This document shows, one piece after another, positions 3,809 to 22,425 of a stretch of 64,000 bases of DNA. Within the stretch, counting starts at the first letter, position 1. Every line of letters starts with the position of its first letter. The notes below the pieces were generated by a model. The model had not been told where the DNA came from. It saw only the letters and a program-made list of their open reading frames with translations, and did no database searches. The stretch lies in IMG/VR virus record IMGVR_UViG_3300035670_000008, positions 1 to 64,000 of that record. One strand, given 5' to 3'. Made by a program: the position numbers and the translations under genes.

Positions 3809-4013
3809 TATTGTCGATGGTCTTGAAGAAGATGTAGACAGCGCCGCTGGGCATAGTAACGTACATTAAGTCTTCCTGCACGGCGGCAACTCGTCCTTCT
3901 GACCTGACAGTGCTGCTACCGCAGCCACGCCAGCCGTTAGAAGTGAGTTCCGCGCCGATGTAGTCTACCTCTACGGTGACTTTTTGGTGGAGTAGTTTAG
4001 CTTTGGCTTCCAT
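3744..4013 (-). CDS. hypothetical protein
   Basis: packed ORF. Confidence 0.5.
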   Translation of the reverse strand: MEAKAKLLHQKVTVEVDYIGAELTSNGWRGCGSSTVRSEGRVAAVQEDLMYVTMPSGAVYIFFKTIDNNGNEVWANNDIGDGAQVVFHG

Positions 4014-4821
4014 ATTGGTCTGGGGTAGTAGCGACAGGGGCAGTAATGGTTTCTTCGCCGTATAGCAGCACAGCTAGCGAGTAGAGCTTATCGATAACGC
4101 CGACCTCTTCAGCATAAGACAAGGCTGACTTACGTTGGTTCTTAGCCCGGGTGACTAGGTCAACGTGGTGGCGGTAGCGGTATTCCCGGTACAAGTCTCC
4201 CCACAGTTTTTGGTAGGACTCCCCGGTACGATACGCGTAGCTACGCAGCAGTTCGTTAAGGCTGGAGCGGATGGACTTTTCGGGTACCTCTTCCATAGCA
4301 GCAGGCAGCGCTAGGATTTCCTTATCCACCCGGTCGAAGCGGCCTTCAATCACCTTCAGGCGGGTGTCTTGTTCTAGCAACGCGCGGGCCTGTTCTTGTT
4401 GACGTTGCTCCACGGCGATGATGGCTTCGGCTTGTAGTCTTAACAGCTCGCCGGGGCTTAGAGGTTGTTGGGTGTAGCTTCCGGTCTTACGAATTGCGGG
4501 TAGTACTTCCGAAGTGACCCAGCGTTTAAATGCTTTGGCTTGCGGCTTGTGGCTGCCTAAAACAGCAGAGTAAAGACCGGACTCATTGATGATAGAGAGC
4601 CTGAAAGTATTGCTGCCAAAGGTTTGTCCCAAAATGGGAGAATCCATTCCGTTGGGGTTAATAGTTTGTTTGTCCTCTTCGTCAACATGCTCTAGCAGTT
4701 TTGCAGGGTTTGAATATTCTAGTACAGCGGCTACTTCTTTAGCCACGAACCAAGGTGTGTCGTCAATAGTGATGACGCTAATGGTTTGGGTGTTGAAATC
4801 GAAAGTATTCAGGTTGCTCAT
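3997..4821 (-). CDS. Bro-N domain (antirepressor-like) DNA-binding protein, Bro-1
   Basis: PWFVAKEVAAVLEY...INESGLYSAVLGSHKPQAKAFKRWVTSEVLPAIRKTGSY. Confidence 0.92.
   Translation of the reverse strand: MSNLNTFDFNTQTISVITIDDTPWFVAKEVAAVLEYSNPAKLLEHVDEEDKQTINPNGMDSPILGQTFGSNTFRLSIINESGLYSAVLGSHKPQAKAFKRWVTSEVLPAIRKTGSYTQQPLSPGELLRLQAEAIIAVEQRQQEQARALLEQDTRLKVIEGRFDRVDKEILALPAAMEEVPEKSIRSSLNELLRSYAYRTGESYQKLWGDLYREYRYRHHVDLVTRAKNQRKSALSYAEEVGVIDKLYSLAVLLYGEETITAPVATTPDQYGSQS
4620..4646. repeat. in-frame quasi-palindrome in Bro-1 (encodes DSPILGQT)
   Basis: aggtttgtccc-aaaat-gggagaatcca, 8 of 11 arm positions pair. Confidence 0.6.
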
Positions 4822-4859
4822 AGTTAGGGTAAAATCCTTAGAAAATTAGGGTGAATAAA

Positions 4860-5054
4860 ATGGCAGACCTTTATGAAAAGACCTACCACGCTGCGTTGGA
4901 TTGGGCGAAGCGGCACTACCCCAACGCGAGTAAATACCACGTGGCTGCGTTTGGAGACTCCGTGGTCTACTTGGTGACCGGAGCCTCAACTTCTTTAGGG
5001 GGAGGGCCTTCGATAAGAGAAGTACTTTCTTTCTTATGGCAGGAGGTAGTTTAA
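4860..5054 (+). pseudogene. 5' half of a gene interrupted by the paralogue+HNH insertion
   Basis: MADLYEKTYHAALDW...GGGPSIRE aligns with the N-terminus of the 5058..5507 product. Confidence 0.75.
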
Positions 5055-5057
5055 GTT

Positions 5058-5507
5058 ATGGACATCATTAAGATGTATCACCGCGCTCATAAATGGGGAT
5101 TAAATCATCACAGCGCGGCTCATCCTCAACACCACCGCTCCTTTGCTGCAGCAGTAGCTCAGCTATGCTGTGACGACCCAAAGGAGCCACTGAACAAAAG
5201 GGAGACGCTACTCCTAGAACTTTTACAGATTAGCGGCGGTCCGACGTGCCGTGAAGGTGCAGCAATATGGGCAGCCTATGGTAAAGGCGACTCGGTTAAG
5301 TCTAAGCATGAAGGTATGACTATCTTTTATGTAGACCCTAAGGTTAAGCGTCCAGGTACCTGGACGTTCGACGAAGCAGTTGAGCATTGTGAGCCTTACT
5401 GCTACGGCGAGCTAACTAAGTTGCACCTCGAAGTTTCCAGAACTGACCCGTGCTTTGATGACCCGCCGGAAGATTTGTTATCCTTGAAGAAACTATTATC
5501 TTCTTAA
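5058..5507 (+). CDS. hypothetical protein, full-length paralogue of the interrupted gene
   Basis: N-half matches 4860..5021 and C-half matches 6142..6396. Confidence 0.8.
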   Translation: MDIIKMYHRAHKWGLNHHSAAHPQHHRSFAAAVAQLCCDDPKEPLNKRETLLLELLQISGGPTCREGAAIWAAYGKGDSVKSKHEGMTIFYVDPKVKRPGTWTFDEAVEHCEPYCYGELTKLHLEVSRTDPCFDDPPEDLLSLKKLLSS

Positions 5508-5509
5508 GG

Positions 5510-6136
5510 ATGTCTAGAAAAGACTTAACGGGACAAAGGTTTGGGCAACTTATAGCGCTGGAGCCCGCAGAAAAACTTAAAGGAAAAAGCACTTGGCTTT
5601 GTCAGTGTGACTGTGGTGAGATGACTATCGTCCAGACTAAGCGTTTAACTACTGGACATACAAAGTCGTGTGGTTGTCTTCAAAGAACCATAACTTTGAA
5701 GCATGGCTTAGCTAGGTCGAAGACCTACCAGGCATGGCGCAATATGAAGTGTCGTTGTTTGTTGAAAACCAGAAAAAGGTGGAAGGACTACGGAGGTCGG
5801 GGAATAACTGTAGACCCAAGTTGGATGGACTTTGAAAACTTCTTAAGAGACATGGGCGAAGCTCCTCCAGGTATGTCCCTTGAGCGTGTCGATAACGATG
5901 GCAACTACTGTAAAGAGAATTGTATATGGGCAAGCTGGGAAGACCAGTATCGTAATCGTAGGACGAGTATTCTTATAACTTTGGAAGGGGAAACCAAAAC
6001 TATATCGGAGTGGTGTAGGCACTACGGCATCAACAGAAGCGTTTACGTGTCTCGAACTAAAAGAGGGTGGAGCATAGAAGCTGCTTTGACTACTCCGGTG
6101 GATAGTCGTTTTCATCCGAAGAAATATTGTGGCTAG
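5510..6136 (+). CDS. HNH-family homing endonuclease
   Basis: DLTGQRFG..WLCQCDCG..KSCGC..YGGRGI..SLERVDNDGNYCKENC.W. Confidence 0.9.
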   Translation: MSRKDLTGQRFGQLIALEPAEKLKGKSTWLCQCDCGEMTIVQTKRLTTGHTKSCGCLQRTITLKHGLARSKTYQAWRNMKCRCLLKTRKRWKDYGGRGITVDPSWMDFENFLRDMGEAPPGMSLERVDNDGNYCKENCIWASWEDQYRNRRTSILITLEGETKTISEWCRHYGINRSVYVSRTKRGWSIEAALTTPVDSRFHPKKYCG

Positions 6137-6141
6137 TAAAC

Positions 6142-6396
6142 GACTTAGTTAGCTGGAGTCTGATGGGGCCTAAGGGTCAGTGGAGTAAAGTCCAAACCGA
6201 CAAGGGGGAGCTGACTGCTCTATTCCCAGATGGGTCGATGACCCCTGCAGGGGAGTGGGAGTTCGATGCTGCCTGCGGTCACGCAGCGGTCATCTGCTTT
6301 GGGGAGCTACCTCCAATAGCAAAGGTCATCTCTCAACAGGAATTCTGCTTTGACGATGACCCTGCAGATATGGATGCGCTAGCGGAGATGGATTAG
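6142..6396 (+). pseudogene. 3' half of the interrupted gene (may be translated from TTG 6127)
   Basis: GEWEFDAACGHAAVICFGEL...CFDDDPAD vs GTWTFDEAVEHCEPYCYGEL...CFDDPPED. Confidence 0.75.
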
Positions 6397-6638
6397 AGTA
6401 CGCTTAACTGTACGTCGTCGATTTGAATAAGTTCTATTTGGGTGGGCTCCCCGTCGGTGCCGTAGTGGACAATCACGCCGGGGGCTACTTCTTCGCTTTC
6501 GACGACTTCGCTGTAGCCAATGCTAAAGGTTGCGGCCTTGTCATTAATATTGACCCGTAGGGTACGTAGGATAGCTTTGGTGCGGGGGTCAATTGGGTTC
6601 GGGGTTGTTGACTTGTAGTCTTGTGGTGATGTTGTCAT
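6393..6638 (-). CDS. DUF2283 domain protein
   Basis: VVESEEVAPGVIVHYGTDGEPTQIEL. Confidence 0.7.
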   Translation of the reverse strand: MTTSPQDYKSTTPNPIDPRTKAILRTLRVNINDKAATFSIGYSEVVESEEVAPGVIVHYGTDGEPTQIELIQIDDVQLSVL

Positions 6639-6650
6639 GTTTGCATGTGC

Positions 6651-6947
6651 TCAAGTTCGCACGTCTAGTAATACGTTTTCAATCTTGTAGCGGCGGACGT
6701 GAAAGCCCTGCTTAGGCAGCTCTTCTACCAGTTTGTACATCCGCTCCAGCAGCGTTTCGTAGTCCTTGTGCCGTCCGGTGATGAAGGAGTCCAGGTTGCT
6801 GGGGATTCCCTTCTGCATAAAGAGCTTAGCTAACCGGAAGTCCTGCGTAGCTATGGTCTGTTTCAATTGGTCTACTTCGGTGGAGTCCAGAACTGGGTCT
6901 ATGGTAATGTGACACTCGAAGTAGTACTCAGTAGTTGGGTTACTCAT
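6651..6947 (-). CDS. hypothetical protein
   Basis: FECHITI...VRRYKIE phage hypothetical pattern. Confidence 0.6.
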   Translation of the reverse strand: MSNPTTEYYFECHITIDPVLDSTEVDQLKQTIATQDFRLAKLFMQKGIPSNLDSFITGRHKDYETLLERMYKLVEELPKQGFHVRRYKIENVLLDVRT

Positions 6948-19581: not shown

Positions 19582-22425
19582 TTATCCGTGACAAGCGAGG
19601 CACTCCTCAGCACCACCTTCCTTTAGCTTACCAATACTTGCCTGAGTTCGGCTAGGTAAATCAGCTTGGCTAGCGGATTCACTGCGGCAGTAGTAGAGGG
19701 TCTTTAGACCTTTCTTCCAGGCTTGGTAATGGACGCGGGTGTAATAGGTTTCATCTACATCCTTGGTAAAGAATAGATTGACGGACTGGGCCTGCCCTTG
19801 CCGGTGCTTGTCCATTAGTTTCTGCCGGTCAGCCGCCTGGTTGATAATCTCCATTTGGTTGATTTCCCGGGCGGTTAAGAAGACTTCTTTCTCTTCGTCG
19901 GTTAGGAAGTCCAGGTGCTGCACACTACCCTTAGCAGCGACGATAGTATCCCAAACCTCTGGGGTGTCTTTGCCACGGTTAGCCAGTAGCTGCTTGAAGA
20001 TAGGGTTGTAGTAAAGGATAACTCCCTTAGCACCCCGCTTCTCAAAGCAGTTAGCTGCTAGTGGCTCGATGCCTGCGGAGACATGACCACAGATTAGAGA
20101 GTTAGATACCGTAGGCGCGCAGGTTAACGTATGAGTATGACGTAACCCTGTGCCTTTACACCACTCCGGCTCGCCATAGATTTTAGCTAAGTCTTTGCTG
20201 GCTAGGTTAGTCTCATCAGCGAGTTTGTTGAAGATGACTTTATTCAGCAGCCGGGCTTGGTAAGACTCGAAGGGAATCATCTTCTGCTGCAGCAGGGTAT
20301 GATAACCCAGTACCCCTAGACCTAACATCCGACTCTTCTCCGCAAAGCGGACAGCATTCTCGAAGCCAACCATTCGGCTAGCCTTATCAATATACTCTTG
20401 AATAACACCTTCCAAGAACCAGATGGCGTAGTAGATAGCCTTGGTATCTTTCCACTCTTCCCAGCGGGCTAGGTTCATGGAAGACAAACAGCAAACAAAG
20501 GTATGAAGCTCGTCAGTGTAGGCGGTTATCTCGCTGCAATTGCCTGTCATACGGCCATCAGCCAAAGCAAACTTATGAGTGCTAGGAACCTCCGTGCAGT
20601 AAGTTGGAACTGGGTCTACGTCTATGATTTCAACTTTTTGTACTTTTCCGTAGGTAGGTTTAGTGTTATAAGCACCTCGTTTCGTTGGACGCTCGAACTT
20701 CGGTAGTCTTGAGAAGCAGCATACGTCAGCTAGTTTATAGGCGCTGGAATTGGAGACAGTCAGACGGTAGCAGGCCGCTGTGCTGTACTCTCCGTAACCA
20801 TCATTAAAATCCGTTTTACCGGCTGCACGCATACAATTAAGGCTGCTATAAATGCCGAGGCTTTTTAGAAGCAGCTGTATTTGTTCTAGAAAACCTTTGT
20901 GGATGCTTGCTAGTTGGTAACAGCGGGCATCCCGACTGTTTACAACTGTTCCATCCCCGTCAAACAATCCTGCTAGGAATTCTACCTTACTAGTAAACGT
21001 CCAATCTAAGTATTCTTCTGGTAGCTGCTTTTTGTATTCCTTGCACCAAGGATAGAGAGATGCTTTTCGCGCTGTTAGCCCTAGAACGTTAACTCGGTTT
21101 TCACCAGCCATCTTAACATTAGCTTCTGTTATGCACGCGTCGTTGCAGTTTTCGTCGATCGATAAGGAGTTTACACCAGAAAGAATCCGCTCCTGGCACA
21201 TATACTTTGTGTCGTATAGCCACAGAATCGGTTTTCCATTGTAGCTAGTTCCATCGGCGGCTAAGAAACCTTTAAGGTAGGCGGCTTCGAGCTCCACGTT
21301 TCCGTTGTATTGGACTGCGTGTGTTTCCACAGTCATACTGTGCTTGAGGTCCTTAGCTTCCACAAAACCAAAGGCTTCGGTAGGAAAGCGGTGGTTTAAA
21401 GTAACACGGGTTTTACTTCCGTCTCGGAATGTAACTTCTACGAGTTGGTTAGTATGCCCCTTATACTCAAAGGAATTGTTTTGTACCCACTGCTCCCCAT
21501 CCCAGATGGTCACAGTTTTTCCTACGAGGTCTTTTATCTGTTTGGGGCCTTCTGATGTAGCCACCAGCTCTTCACCTAACAGACAGATATTACTAGCTGT
21601 TACCTTTAGATTATTGTTTAAGTAACCAAGCGGAAGGATATCGGGGTTGTTGACGTTGTCTGTGAAGAATAGATAAGGCTCGCCTGTCTCCTTCCGAGTC
21701 TTTAGAATTTCGGTATAAAGTTCGACTGCTTCTGGGTCGCCGCTCTCGATAGCGTGCATATCAGCGTCACTAATACACACCGCATGGTGGAGATTCATGC
21801 AGCGTTGGTTCTCATCCCCTTGGGGACGGCGCATCCGCAGGAACTCCCGAATGTCCTTGTGGTTAAAAGGCAGATACATTGCTGTAGCCCCGCGGCGAGT
21901 CTGCCCTTGGGAAGTAGCTATGGTTGCTGAATCAAAGACCTTACACCAAGGGATGACTCCTTCTGAATAGCCCCCACTGTGAATAGGCTCACCTCGGCCT
22001 CGTACATTCCCGATATATACACCTACACCTGCCCCTTTACTAGATAGATGAGACAGCTCTTTAACCGAGCTAAAGATTCCATGCAAAGAGTCAGATACGC
22101 TAATGGTATTGCATGAGATGGGCAACCCACGGTCGGTACCCATATTACTCAACACAGGTGTAGCTGGGCCTAGCCAGCCGTGCCACATCATTGAAAAGAA
22201 GATGGGGGCTAGCTCGGGTTTACTAAGCCTGGCTGCCACGGCGTTAGCCACACGCTTATACATATCCCAAGGGGTTTCCCCTTCTAGTAGATACCCATGT
22301 TTAAGGGTGTGTAGACCCTCTGGAGTCATCCAGTAAGGCTGCTCGTTGACGGGCTTGTGACGAATGAGTGGAATACCGTGAACTTCTTGAGTGGCGGCGG
22401 CAGGGGGGATAGGAAAGATGAACAT
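19582..22425 (-). CDS. nrdA: class Ia ribonucleotide reductase alpha subunit containing an intein
   Basis: PATPVLSN, ISC, SQG..RRGA, TGEPY, SNI|C...N|CSEI, APTVSNS, GLKTLYY, C-terminal CLAC. Confidence 0.95.
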   Translation of the reverse strand: MFIFPIPPAAATQEVHGIPLIRHKPVNEQPYWMTPEGLHTLKHGYLLEGETPWDMYKRVANAVAARLSKPELAPIFFSMMWHGWLGPATPVLSNMGTDRGLPISCNTISVSDSLHGIFSSVKELSHLSSKGAGVGVYIGNVRGRGEPIHSGGYSEGVIPWCKVFDSATIATSQGQTRRGATAMYLPFNHKDIREFLRMRRPQGDENQRCMNLHHAVCISDADMHAIESGDPEAVELYTEILKTRKETGEPYLFFTDNVNNPDILPLGYLNNNLKVTASNICLLGEELVATSEGPKQIKDLVGKTVTIWDGEQWVQNNSFEYKGHTNQLVEVTFRDGSKTRVTLNHRFPTEAFGFVEAKDLKHSMTVETHAVQYNGNVELEAAYLKGFLAADGTSYNGKPILWLYDTKYMCQERILSGVNSLSIDENCNDACITEANVKMAGENRVNVLGLTARKASLYPWCKEYKKQLPEEYLDWTFTSKVEFLAGLFDGDGTVVNSRDARCYQLASIHKGFLEQIQLLLKSLGIYSSLNCMRAAGKTDFNDGYGEYSTAACYRLTVSNSSAYKLADVCCFSRLPKFERPTKRGAYNTKPTYGKVQKVEIIDVDPVPTYCTEVPSTHKFALADGRMTGNCSEITAYTDELHTFVCCLSSMNLARWEEWKDTKAIYYAIWFLEGVIQEYIDKASRMVGFENAVRFAEKSRMLGLGVLGYHTLLQQKMIPFESYQARLLNKVIFNKLADETNLASKDLAKIYGEPEWCKGTGLRHTHTLTCAPTVSNSLICGHVSAGIEPLAANCFEKRGAKGVILYYNPIFKQLLANRGKDTPEVWDTIVAAKGSVQHLDFLTDEEKEVFLTAREINQMEIINQAADRQKLMDKHRQGQAQSVNLFFTKDVDETYYTRVHYQAWKKGLKTLYYCRSESASQADLPSRTQASIGKLKEGGAEECLACHG
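20539..21585 (-). mobile_element. 349-aa intein with LAGLIDADG homing endonuclease
   Basis: starts CLLGEELV; block B VTLNHRF; YLKGFLAADG and FLAGLFDGDG; ends MTGN before C-extein Cys. Confidence 0.93.

What the first reader, a model, noticed from the sequence alone, without database searches (positions are those of the whole stretch)
4860..6396. Homing endonuclease cassette that splits a gene and brings an intact paralogue of the same gene
ORF 4860..5021 (YHAALDWAKRH...AAF...GGPSIRE) and ORF 6142..6396 (DLVSW...GEWEFDAACGH...CFGEL...CFDDDPAD) are the two halves of one gene. Joining 5021 to 6142 is in frame and collinear with the inserted 149-aa protein (YHRAHKWGLNH...SF...GGPTCRE-GAAIW...GTWTFDEAVEH...CYGEL...CFDDPPED). 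The 1120-bp insert is a short leader with AGGAGG, the divergent paralogue and an HNH gene. It leaves no room for a ribozyme and has no intein motifs. Inference: a self-complementing selfish element that offsets disruption by supplying a cleavage-resistant replacement gene instead of splicing. This implies the unknown protein matters for phage fitness.
Basis: partly seen in the sequence, partly recalled or inferred. Interest (0 to 1): 0.78.

Follow-up and report, generated by a model that had tools for sequence, protein, structure and literature searches.

The report
Mobile nuclease cassette carrying a paralogue
A small phage gene of unknown function is cut exactly in two by a 1,120-base mobile insert that carries a homing-type nuclease gene plus a whole distant relative of the broken gene; related phages still have the gene uninterrupted.

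Summary
Window 4860..5021 and 6142..6396 are the two halves of one gene (X'). A collinear related phage (L015) has the uninterrupted 138-aa allele at the same position, 86-88% identical to both halves. The insert is exactly 5022..6141, with no bases lost or duplicated. It holds a 36-nt leader with AGGAGG, a 149-aa distant paralogue (X) and a 208-aa HNH-annotated nuclease. No Rfam family matches, and there is no room for an intein.

A second phage lineage has the same layout. Partial contigs from drinking-water and biofilm samples fit it; freshwater and soil samples hold short cassette fragments. Between lineages the leader, X and the nuclease C-part are 97-100% identical (X dS 0.05). The flanking halves are only 77-89% identical (dS 0.4-1.2). 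The switch falls within 3-9 nt of the left junction, which is the signature of an element spreading by homing.

Not shown: that X functionally replaces X'. X belongs to a separate clade (26-32% identity). Both halves stay open, so they may still work as a two-piece protein. Cleavage was not tested, and the nuclease has Arg where HNH enzymes have the catalytic His. This is a new variant of a known kind.

The parts
3997..4821 (-). Upstream neighbour, a Bro-N/antirepressor gene. It is not part of the element. L010 and L015 have a different gene here.
   Evidence: Pfam Bro-N 1.5e-23 and phrog_130 4e-46. Similarity to L010 and L015 starts only at 4825.
4860..5021 (+). N', the 5' half of the split gene X' (54 codons, ending ..GGPSIRE). 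The ORF may start at GTG 4851. It runs on to TAA 5052-5054, adding 10 cassette-encoded residues (VLSFLWQEVV).
   Evidence: 88% identical to intact P0250 in L015. dN/dS is 0.04 against L010.
5022..6141 (+). The 1120-bp insert (cassette). It is absent from the syntenic phage L015 and from L013.
   Evidence: BLASTN breakpoints at 5021 and 6154 and the codon alignment. The same insert, 1122 bp, is in L010/L011/L012. A drinking-water contig spans most of it and a biofilm sample holds broken contigs; freshwater and soil samples hold short fragments.
5022..5057 (+). Cassette leader. It holds the N' tail and stop, and AGGAGG at 5041-5046, 11 nt before the ATG of X.
   Evidence: It is 100% identical to L010 from 5013 to 5057.
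5058..5507 (+). X, an intact 149-aa distant paralogue of the split gene, carried inside the insert.
   Evidence: Stand-alone homologues P0002-P0007 (64-78% identity) lie without a nuclease gene or N'/C' flanks. X forms a separate clade with 100/99 support. It is 98.4% identical to L010, with dS 0.054.
5510..6136 (+). Nuclease gene, annotated HNH and of homing-endonuclease type. Its ATG lies 2 nt after the stop of X (TAAGGATG), which suggests translational coupling.
   Evidence: phrog_374 at 6e-67. AFDB clusters named 'HNH endonuclease' or 'AP2' at 1e-20. The AF2 model (pLDDT 93.6) has strand-strand-helix elements at residues 122-148. There is a weak PacI match, Z 5.5. No Pfam, NCBIfam or PDB sequence hit.
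6142..6396 (+). C', the 3' half of X'. The first 7 codons (6142-6162) are divergent. The probable independent start is ATG 6163, giving 77 aa, with GGAG at 6155-6158.
   Evidence: 86% identical to intact P0250. dN/dS is 0.03 from ATG 6163. The +1/-1 indels at 6143 and 6149 in another lineage lie before the ATG.
6393..6638 (-). Downstream convergent neighbour, a DUF2283 gene. It is conserved next to X' in L010 and L013, and a DUF2283-like gene lies one gene further along in L015.
   Evidence: Pfam DUF2283 2.5e-5. Synteny.

Best explanation
The segment 5022..6141 is a composite homing-endonuclease cassette. It consists of a short leader with a ribosome-binding site, an intact gene X, and a nuclease gene translationally coupled to X. 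It sits inside X', a distant paralogue of X, between the codons for ..RE and HL.. of the family's most conserved motif.

Inferred mechanism:
1. The nuclease, made at a low level from the X' transcript, cuts uninterrupted X' alleles of co-infecting phages at or near that motif.
2. The break is repaired from the cassette-bearing genome, using N' and C' as homology arms. This copies leader, X and nuclease as one unit, which is homing.
3. The insertion destroys the site, so carriers are immune. X differs at 23 of 42 nt around the equivalent site, so it is probably not a target.

X is therefore co-mobilised cargo.

Shown here: the exact insertion, the empty site, the same layout in a second complete lineage with partial contigs that fit it and short cassette fragments in other environments, and a cassette much younger than its flanks.

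Inferred: cleavage, its site, expression, and any compensation.
For: Exact insertion and empty site:
- Intact alleles P0250/L015 and P0131/L013 sit in the same neighbourhood, and the junction lies between two codons.
- L015 is collinear with the window over more than 15 kb.

Same layout elsewhere:
- L010, L011 and L012 are one lineage found in three samples.
- A drinking-water contig spans 4893-6392.
- A biofilm sample holds separate N', cassette and C' contigs.
- Freshwater and soil samples hold short cassette fragments only.

Cassette younger than its flanks (window against L010):
- 5013-5529 is 98.5-100% identical, and the nuclease C-part is 99% identical.
- N' is 81% and C' 89% identical.
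- dS is 0.054 for X against 1.21 for N' and 0.44 for C'.
- In the drinking-water lineage the last flank mismatch is at 5019 and the next at 5051. Over the positions listed (4925-5019), the N' flank of that lineage is roughly 77% identical, against about 97% over X. The biofilm contigs give about 84% and 99%.
- N' of the window, of L010 and of intact L015 are about equally distant from one another, at 78-82%. Carriers are therefore not a clade for this flank.

Other points:
- The nuclease is under purifying selection (C-part dN/dS 0.08; N-part dN 0.16 with dS saturated).
- The target motif is the most conserved stretch of a family with 120 representative clusters.
- The packing is tight, with an AGGAGG leader and a TAAGGATG overlap. 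This resembles the translational coupling described for T4 mobE (PMC2988022).
Against: - No cleavage data exist.
- No Pfam, NCBIfam or PDB sequence match supports the nuclease label.
- The position where HNH enzymes carry the catalytic His is an invariant Arg, R126. The best structural match, PacI, scores only Z 5.5.
- The cassette is not uniformly young. The nuclease N-part is 71.5% identical and its tail with the right junction 43% between lineages. These parts reassort (P0253, P0255). General recombination clearly also shapes the locus.
- No X-nuclease pair was found outside X', and no sample was shown to hold both filled and empty sites.
- Only two full-length carrier lineages were available.
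Confidence: 0.7

Rival explanations
1. Genes in pieces. The insertion is as described, but X' is not lost. N' (64-67 aa) and C' (77 aa, from ATG 6163) are made separately and reassemble into a working protein, as the split NrdA of Aeromonas phage Aeh1 does. X is then an additional paralogue, not a substitute. This can be true together with homing.
For: - In the two fully sequenced carrier lineages and in further protein variants of each half (P0166, P0247, P0248, P0249), the halves are open ORFs of unchanged length.
- dN/dS is 0.04 for N' and 0.03 for C'.
- Nonsynonymous changes and +1/-1 indels are concentrated in the 21 nt between the junction and ATG 6163. This is what is expected if translation restarts at 6163.
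- There is a GGAG 4 nt upstream of the ATG.
- Working HEG-split phage genes are documented (PMC2988022).
Against: - The break lies inside helix 3 (residues 51-59) of a compact single-domain model with pLDDT 95.9. It is not at a domain boundary.
- The low dN/dS may date from before each invasion, when the alleles were intact.
- The internal Met is also present in the intact allele P0250, so it is not an adaptation to the split.
Confidence: 0.35
2. Hitch-hiker. The nuclease gene first lived as a free-standing homing endonuclease next to X, as in classical intronless homing where the linked allele is resistant. A single illegitimate event placed the X-nuclease pair into the paralogue X'. X is there by ancestry, X' is dispensable, and no compensation was ever selected.
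For: - X-type genes normally stand alone as single plus-strand genes.
- Free-standing HEGs sit beside the gene they target, and 'transposition-like' HEG insertions into genes are known (PMC2988022).
- The family is accessory, of unknown function and highly variable in content between phages.
- X and X' are too different (26-32% identity) to be assumed equivalent.
Against: - None of the six stand-alone X loci recovered has a nuclease gene next to X.
- The junctions are exact to the codon, which is unusual for illegitimate capture.
- X shows no special substitutions at the motif compared with nuclease-free X alleles.
Confidence: 0.35
3. A frozen rearrangement. The insertion is old and no longer mobile, the nuclease-like protein is inactive or has another role, and the identity mosaic comes from ordinary homologous recombination between phages.
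For: - There are several recombination tracts unrelated to the junctions. The nuclease N-part is 71.5% identical, 6331-6560 is 99%, and the nuclease N-part and tail reassort.
- The catalytic His is not evident.
Against: - In two independent comparisons the switch from diverged to near-identical sequence falls 3-9 nt from the left junction.
- The nuclease ORF is intact and constrained in all variants.
- The N' flanks of carriers are as far from each other as from an intact allele.
- Logan contigs break at the junction in two samples (X9 at 5027/5035, X10 at 5023). This fits several flank-cassette combinations within a sample.
Confidence: 0.1
4. A splicing or recoding element. The insert is removed at the RNA level (group I/II intron), at the protein level (intein or split intein), or skipped by ribosomes, so that an intact X' protein is made.
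For: The insertion lies between codons at a conserved site, as intron and intein insertions do.
Against: - The Rfam E-value scan of 4600-6700 on both strands gave no match.
- Only 36 + 2 + 5 nt of the insert are non-coding.
- The N' frame stops after 10 codons, and the C' frame is open for only 12 codons before the junction. No intein or split-intein halves fit.
- The 1120-nt gap is far beyond the 50-nt T4 gene 60 bypass.
Confidence: 0.03

Closest known systems
Free-standing HNH/GIY-YIG homing endonucleases that split phage genes: mobE in nrdA of Aeromonas phage Aeh1, mobA in T4 topoisomerase genes 39/60, seg in gene 43 of phage 25 (review PMC2988022)
   Same: - A nuclease gene without an intron or intein is inserted in a conserved part of a phage gene and turns it into two ORFs.
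- It is tightly packed against, or translationally coupled to, the upstream ORF.
- Related phages have the uninterrupted gene.
   Different: - Here the insert also carries a complete, separately translated paralogue of the gene it splits.
- The target is a small accessory gene of unknown function.
- The split falls inside a helix of a single small domain.
Fungal mitochondrial mobile ORFs (mORFs) that bring a foreign C-terminal gene segment: Allomyces macrogynus atp6; Glomus atp6, atp9, cox2 and nad3 hybrids (PMC3630166)
   Same: - The endonuclease cassette carries coding sequence homologous to its target, and this takes over from the displaced native part.
- The native remnant stays downstream.
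- The inserted copy is much more divergent than the native one.
   Different: - In fungi the carried piece is only the C-terminus, fused in frame to the host gene to give a hybrid gene.
- Here it is a whole gene with its own ribosome-binding site, a stop codon ends N' first, and both native halves stay as ORFs.
- The setting is a phage, not an organelle, and the nuclease is of a different family.
T4 mobA plus 50-nt ribosomal bypass cassette (bioRxiv 10.1101/2022.08.31.505936; Bonocora et al. 2011, cited from my own knowledge)
   Same: A homing-endonuclease cassette travels with a second feature that limits the damage of its insertion.
   Different: The accessory feature there is a translational bypass signal that keeps the host protein whole. 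Here it is a separate paralogous gene.
HEG-bounded exchange tracts or 'HEG islands' in phages (PMC10448857)
   Same: A nuclease gene lies at the boundary between near-identical and diverged sequence in related phages. Domain-level reassortment is seen within the nuclease gene.
   Different: The scale is 1.1 kb inside one gene rather than more than 10 kb between essential genes. The boundary coincides with an exact insertion junction.

Membership tests
Homing endonuclease gene (mobile by homing) | Presence/absence polymorphism with a precise empty site in related genomes | tested here: met
   L015 (collinear over more than 15 kb) and L013 carry uninterrupted X'. The insert is exactly 1120 bp with nothing lost or duplicated.
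Homing endonuclease gene (mobile by homing) | The element is more conserved than its flanks, and the change falls at the insertion junction | tested here: met
   X has dS 0.054 against 1.21 for N' and 0.44 for C'. Identity switches at 5012/5013 (against L010) and at 5019/5051 (against the drinking-water lineage). The right side is less clean: the tail and right junction are 43% identical.
Homing endonuclease gene (mobile by homing) | Site-specific cleavage of the element-free allele and super-Mendelian inheritance | not testable with these tools
   This needs protein and DNA assays or phage crosses. The host is unknown.
HNH (beta-beta-alpha-metal) nuclease | Sequence or structure match to the HNH fold | tested here: inconclusive
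   - For: phrog_374 'HNH endonuclease' at 6e-67; AFDB clusters auto-named HNH or AP2 at 1e-20; the model has strand 122-126, strand 138-142 and helix 143-148; PacI match at Z 5.5 over 96 residues.
- Against: no Pfam, NCBIfam or PDB sequence hit, and no Foldseek PDB hit.
HNH (beta-beta-alpha-metal) nuclease | Catalytic His at the end of the first strand, plus Asn and Asn/His | tested here: inconclusive
   The invariant residues are R126, N137 and N149, and also H65. Arg stands where, on my reading of the model, the His is expected. No structural superposition on a solved HNH active site was made.
Group I / group II intron | Ribozyme core detectable in the insert | tested here: not met
   The Rfam 15 E-value scan of 4600-6700 gave 0 matches at E<=1. 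Only 43 nt of the insert are non-coding.
Intein / split intein ('fractured genes', PMC2677866) | An in-frame Hint domain, or N- and C-intein halves at the ends of the two gene pieces | tested here: not met
   N' has 10 extra residues and then a stop. The C' frame is open for only 12 codons upstream of the junction. No Pfam hit on either piece.
Fungal mORF-type hybrid gene | The cassette-borne gene segment is fused in frame to the upstream host part | tested here: not met
   TAA at 5052-5054 ends N'. X starts at its own ATG 5058 behind AGGAGG.
Protein family of X and X' (unnamed) | Both halves and X match one profile collinearly | tested here: met
   Profile A3 finds 120 representative clusters. 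Alignments A3 and A5 are collinear. The AF2 model has pLDDT 95.9. No PDB fold match was found (best Foldseek E 0.49; best VIA Z 4.4).

The most novel reading that the evidence does not exclude
The cassette may be a paralogue-replacement drive. The nuclease does not merely tolerate X as cargo. It spreads X by destroying the rival paralogue X' in every phage it meets. Selection on an accessory gene family (X against X') would then be played out through a homing endonuclease. Carrying a whole gene would be a third, splicing-free way, beside introns/inteins and in-frame C-terminal swaps, for such elements to invade coding sequence. The N' tail encoded by the cassette and the C' restart may further keep a two-piece X' alive.
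Probability: 0.25. Interest if true: 0.8.

Novelty: new variant of a known kind. Interest (0 to 1): 0.6.

Why it matters
Homing endonucleases are known to enter coding sequence in three ways. They hide in introns or inteins, they split genes whose pieces still assemble, or (in fungal mitochondria) they bring a replacement C-terminus. A phage cassette that carries a complete paralogue of its own target would be a further solution.

It would also be a concrete example of a nuclease driving the replacement of one accessory-gene variant by another across phage populations in groundwater, drinking water, biofilm, freshwater and soil.

The system is small (1.1 kb), and natural filled and empty alleles are in hand, so it is directly testable. 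It also flags an uncharacterised phage protein family of 120 clusters, with a confidently predicted fold that matches no solved structure, as a target of genetic conflict.

Tried and rejected
- **Intron, intein, bypass.** Rejected on the Rfam scan and the ORF geometry.
- **Terminal repeats or target-site duplication.** None found at the junctions.
- **Promoters and terminators.** Nothing useful.
- **ATG 6163 as an adaptation to the split.** Rejected, because the intact allele P0250 already has this Met.
- **Other split family members.** P0243 and P0211 begin at the same motif, but these are mis-called starts of full-length ORFs.
- **X-nuclease pair outside X'.** Not found. The six stand-alone X loci have no nuclease gene. 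Exact-pattern scans of viral and metagenome contigs found nothing. Protein-pattern scans returned only L003 again or nothing.
- **Resistance-type substitutions in X at the motif.** No signal.
- **Function of the family.** No Pfam, PHROG, NCBIfam or PDB sequence hit, no PDB fold match, and ESM Atlas scores of 0.62 or less.
- **Searching the rest of the L015 record for X.** Not possible, as the record is not held.
- **RNA evidence on splicing.** None of the 14 listed runs was an RNA run.
Full report
**Setting.** The window is the first 64 kb of a 216,563-bp IMG/VR virus record, 96% complete by CheckV. It encodes a ribonucleotide reductase, helicases, a DNA polymerase and tail proteins. The locus lies in a run of small genes:
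- Bro-N antirepressor, 3997..4821 (-)
- four plus-strand ORFs: N' 4851/4860..5054, X 5058..5507, nuclease 5510..6136, C' 6127/6163..6396
- a convergent DUF2283 gene, 6393..6638 (-)

N' and C' each resemble X weakly but collinearly. N' gives E 4e-5 at 26% identity over X residues 5-66. C' gives E 5e-12 at 32% over X residues 75-139.

A profile of the family found 120 representative clusters among 1.84 billion proteins. The best match for both halves is the same intact 138-aa protein, P0131. N' residues 8-59 match its residues 4-55 at 67% identity. C' residues 7-75 match its residues 55-124 at 59%. The alignment puts the break inside the family's most conserved motif, GGPS[IV]RE|HL.SW.

The 90%-identity cluster of C' contains a full-length allele, P0250, which reads ..GGPSIRE-HLNSWSLMGP... 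Its contig (L015) is collinear with the window over more than 15 kb at 75-89% nucleotide identity. BLASTN runs to window 5021, skips, and resumes at 6154. L015 has 12 nt between these points where the window has 1132. A second uninterrupted allele (L013) also sits head-to-tail against a DUF2283 gene.

The insert is therefore 5022..6141, which is 1120 bp. It lies between two codons, with nothing lost or duplicated and no terminal repeats.

**What the insert contains.**
- A 36-nt leader. It supplies ten extra residues and the stop of N', and holds AGGAGG at 5041-5046.
- X, 149 aa.
- The nuclease gene, two bases after the stop of X (TAAGGATG). Its own stop lies five bases before the right junction.
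- Only 43 nt are non-coding.

An Rfam scan at E<=1 found nothing on either strand. The frames leave no room for an intein or split intein.

X belongs to a well-supported clade (100/99) far from X' in the family tree. Its six closest homologues (64-78% identity) are stand-alone genes with no nuclease gene and no N'/C' flanks. One relative (L004) carries an X-type gene and a divergent X'-like gene side by side. The window genome has no other copy of X, X' or the nuclease.

**The nuclease.** The HNH label rests on the following:
- phrog_374 at 6e-67
- AlphaFold-DB clusters auto-named 'HNH endonuclease' or 'AP2' at 1e-20
- a confident model (pLDDT 93.6) with a strand-strand-helix element at residues 122-148, an N-terminal small barrel and a C-terminal helical domain
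- a weak match of residues 58-175 to the HNH restriction enzyme PacI, Z 5.5

Pfam, NCBIfam, PDB sequence searches and Foldseek against the PDB gave nothing. The invariant residues are R126, N137, N149 and H65. An Arg stands where I would expect the catalytic His. Activity is plausible but unproven.

**Evidence that the cassette moves.** The nearest nuclease homologue (85% aa identity) lies in a second phage lineage with the identical layout N'-X-nuclease-C'-DUF2283. This lineage was recovered from three samples as L010, L011 and L012. Outside this block the two phages differ.

Within the block, identity between the window and L010 is a mosaic:

| Segment | Coordinates | Identity |
|---|---|---|
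| N' body | 4860-5012 | 81% |
| last 9 nt of N', leader, X, nuclease start | 5013-5529 | 98.5-100% |
| nuclease N-part | 5530-5810 | 71.5% |
| nuclease C-part | 5811-6098 | 99% |
| nuclease tail and right junction | 6099-6154 | 43% |
| C' body | 6155-6330 | 89% |
| C' end and DUF2283 3' part | 6331-6560 | 99% |

Synonymous divergence is 0.054 in X, against 1.21 in N' and 0.44 in C'. This is an 8- to 20-fold difference between adjacent genes.

Logan contigs from other environments add to this:
- **Drinking-water sample.** One contig spans 4893-6392. Over the positions listed, its N' flank is roughly 77% identical, with the last mismatch at 5019. The cassette is about 97% identical, with the next mismatch at 5051.
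- **Biofilm sample.** The flanks are about 84-86% identical and the cassette about 99%.
- **Freshwater and soil samples.** These hold cassette fragments.
- **Contig breaks.** Contigs end at 5023 and at 5027/5035 in two samples. This fits several flank-cassette combinations within a sample.

N' of the window, of L010 and of the intact allele L015 are about equidistant, at 78-82%. Carriers are therefore not a clade for that flank.

A young, near-uniform element in old, diverged flanks, with the switch at the insertion junction and an empty site in a syntenic relative, is what homing produces. Leader, X and nuclease share one history on the left side. X is part of the mobile unit.

The picture is not perfectly clean. 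The nuclease N-part and its tail each exist in two diverged forms, and these reassort (P0253, P0255). Ordinary recombination also acts here.

**Are the halves dead?** The AlphaFold model of the intact protein is compact (pLDDT 95.9, pTM 0.90). The break at E53|H54 lies inside helix 3, not between domains. This argues against easy reassembly.

Several points argue the other way:
- In the two fully sequenced carrier lineages and in further protein variants, both halves are open ORFs of constant length.
- dN/dS is 0.03-0.04.
- The only indels and the excess of amino-acid changes fall in the 21 nt between the junction and ATG 6163. Translation of C' would restart there, behind a GGAG.

The low dN/dS may simply date from before each invasion. 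The Met is ancestral. The question stays open.

**Does X compensate?** Nothing tested here bears on it directly. X shares 19 of 42 nt with X' around the site, so it is probably not a target. X shows no unusual substitutions there compared with nuclease-free X alleles.

The family has no known function. There was no match in Pfam, PHROG, NCBIfam or the PDB by sequence or by fold. Only unnamed relatives turned up in AFDB and BFVD. A few members are fused to HTH or Cys-rich tails.

**Comparison with what is known.**
- Free-standing endonucleases that split phage genes are known: mobE in Aeh1 nrdA, mobA in T4 genes 39/60, and seg in gene 43. Translational coupling to the upstream gene is also described (PMC2988022).
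- Endonuclease cassettes that carry a foreign C-terminal copy of their target, leaving the native remnant downstream, are known in fungal mitochondria (PMC3630166).
- Nuclease genes at boundaries of exchange, and domain shuffling in them, are described for phages (PMC10448857).
- My literature searches found no description of a phage cassette carrying a complete, separately translated paralogue nested inside its homologous target. These searches cover only open-access papers, so this is not proof of absence.

**Verdict.** The finding is real and precise. It is best read as a composite homing cassette of paralogue plus nuclease inserted in X'. The 'self-complementing' reading remains an attractive but untested hypothesis, alongside the 'two-piece protein' and 'hitch-hiker' readings. 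I rate it a new variant of a known kind.

Noticed in passing
window 19582..22425 (-): The 947-aa ribonucleotide reductase large subunit matches RNR profiles in two blocks (about aa 28-230 and 625-946). Between them is an insert of about 390 aa that weakly matches an endonuclease PHROG (6e-6). It is probably an intein with a homing-endonuclease domain, which would be a second kind of selfish element in this phage.
   Followed up: no
window 5530..5810 and 6099..6141; P0253, P0255: The nuclease N-terminal part (a barrel with Cys-rich motifs) exists in two forms only 71.5% identical (30 of 93 aa differ). Its last ~12 residues also come in two forms. All four combinations occur in public data, so modules within the nuclease gene reassort.
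   Followed up: partly
L003-L008, L013, L015 and window 4851..6396: Members of this family usually sit as a lone plus-strand gene between arrays of minus-strand genes in otherwise dissimilar phages. This is a moron-like placement and suggests the genes themselves move between genomes.
   Followed up: no
window 3997..4821 (-), compared with L010 979..1557 and L015 7341..7967: The gene just upstream of X' differs between relatives. The window has a Bro-N antirepressor, while L010 and L015 share an unrelated gene of about 200 aa. Similarity to both begins at window 4825, right at the intergenic border.
   Followed up: no
window 6392..6426 (drinking-water run X5): In the drinking-water lineage, 459 extra letters lie between the stop of C' and the DUF2283 gene. 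This is another small insertion or replacement next to the element (table 5).
   Followed up: no
family of X/X' (P0129-P0246): The family has 120 representative clusters, mostly of 110-210 aa. The fold is confidently predicted (pLDDT 95.9) and matches nothing in the PDB. A few members carry Cro/C1-type HTH domains or Cys/His-rich basic tails, hinting at a nucleic-acid-related or regulatory role.
   Followed up: partly
L015 874..1524 (-): The phage with the intact X' carries an unrelated HNH_3-type gene about 7 kb away. It is not similar to the window's nuclease at E<0.01.
   Followed up: no
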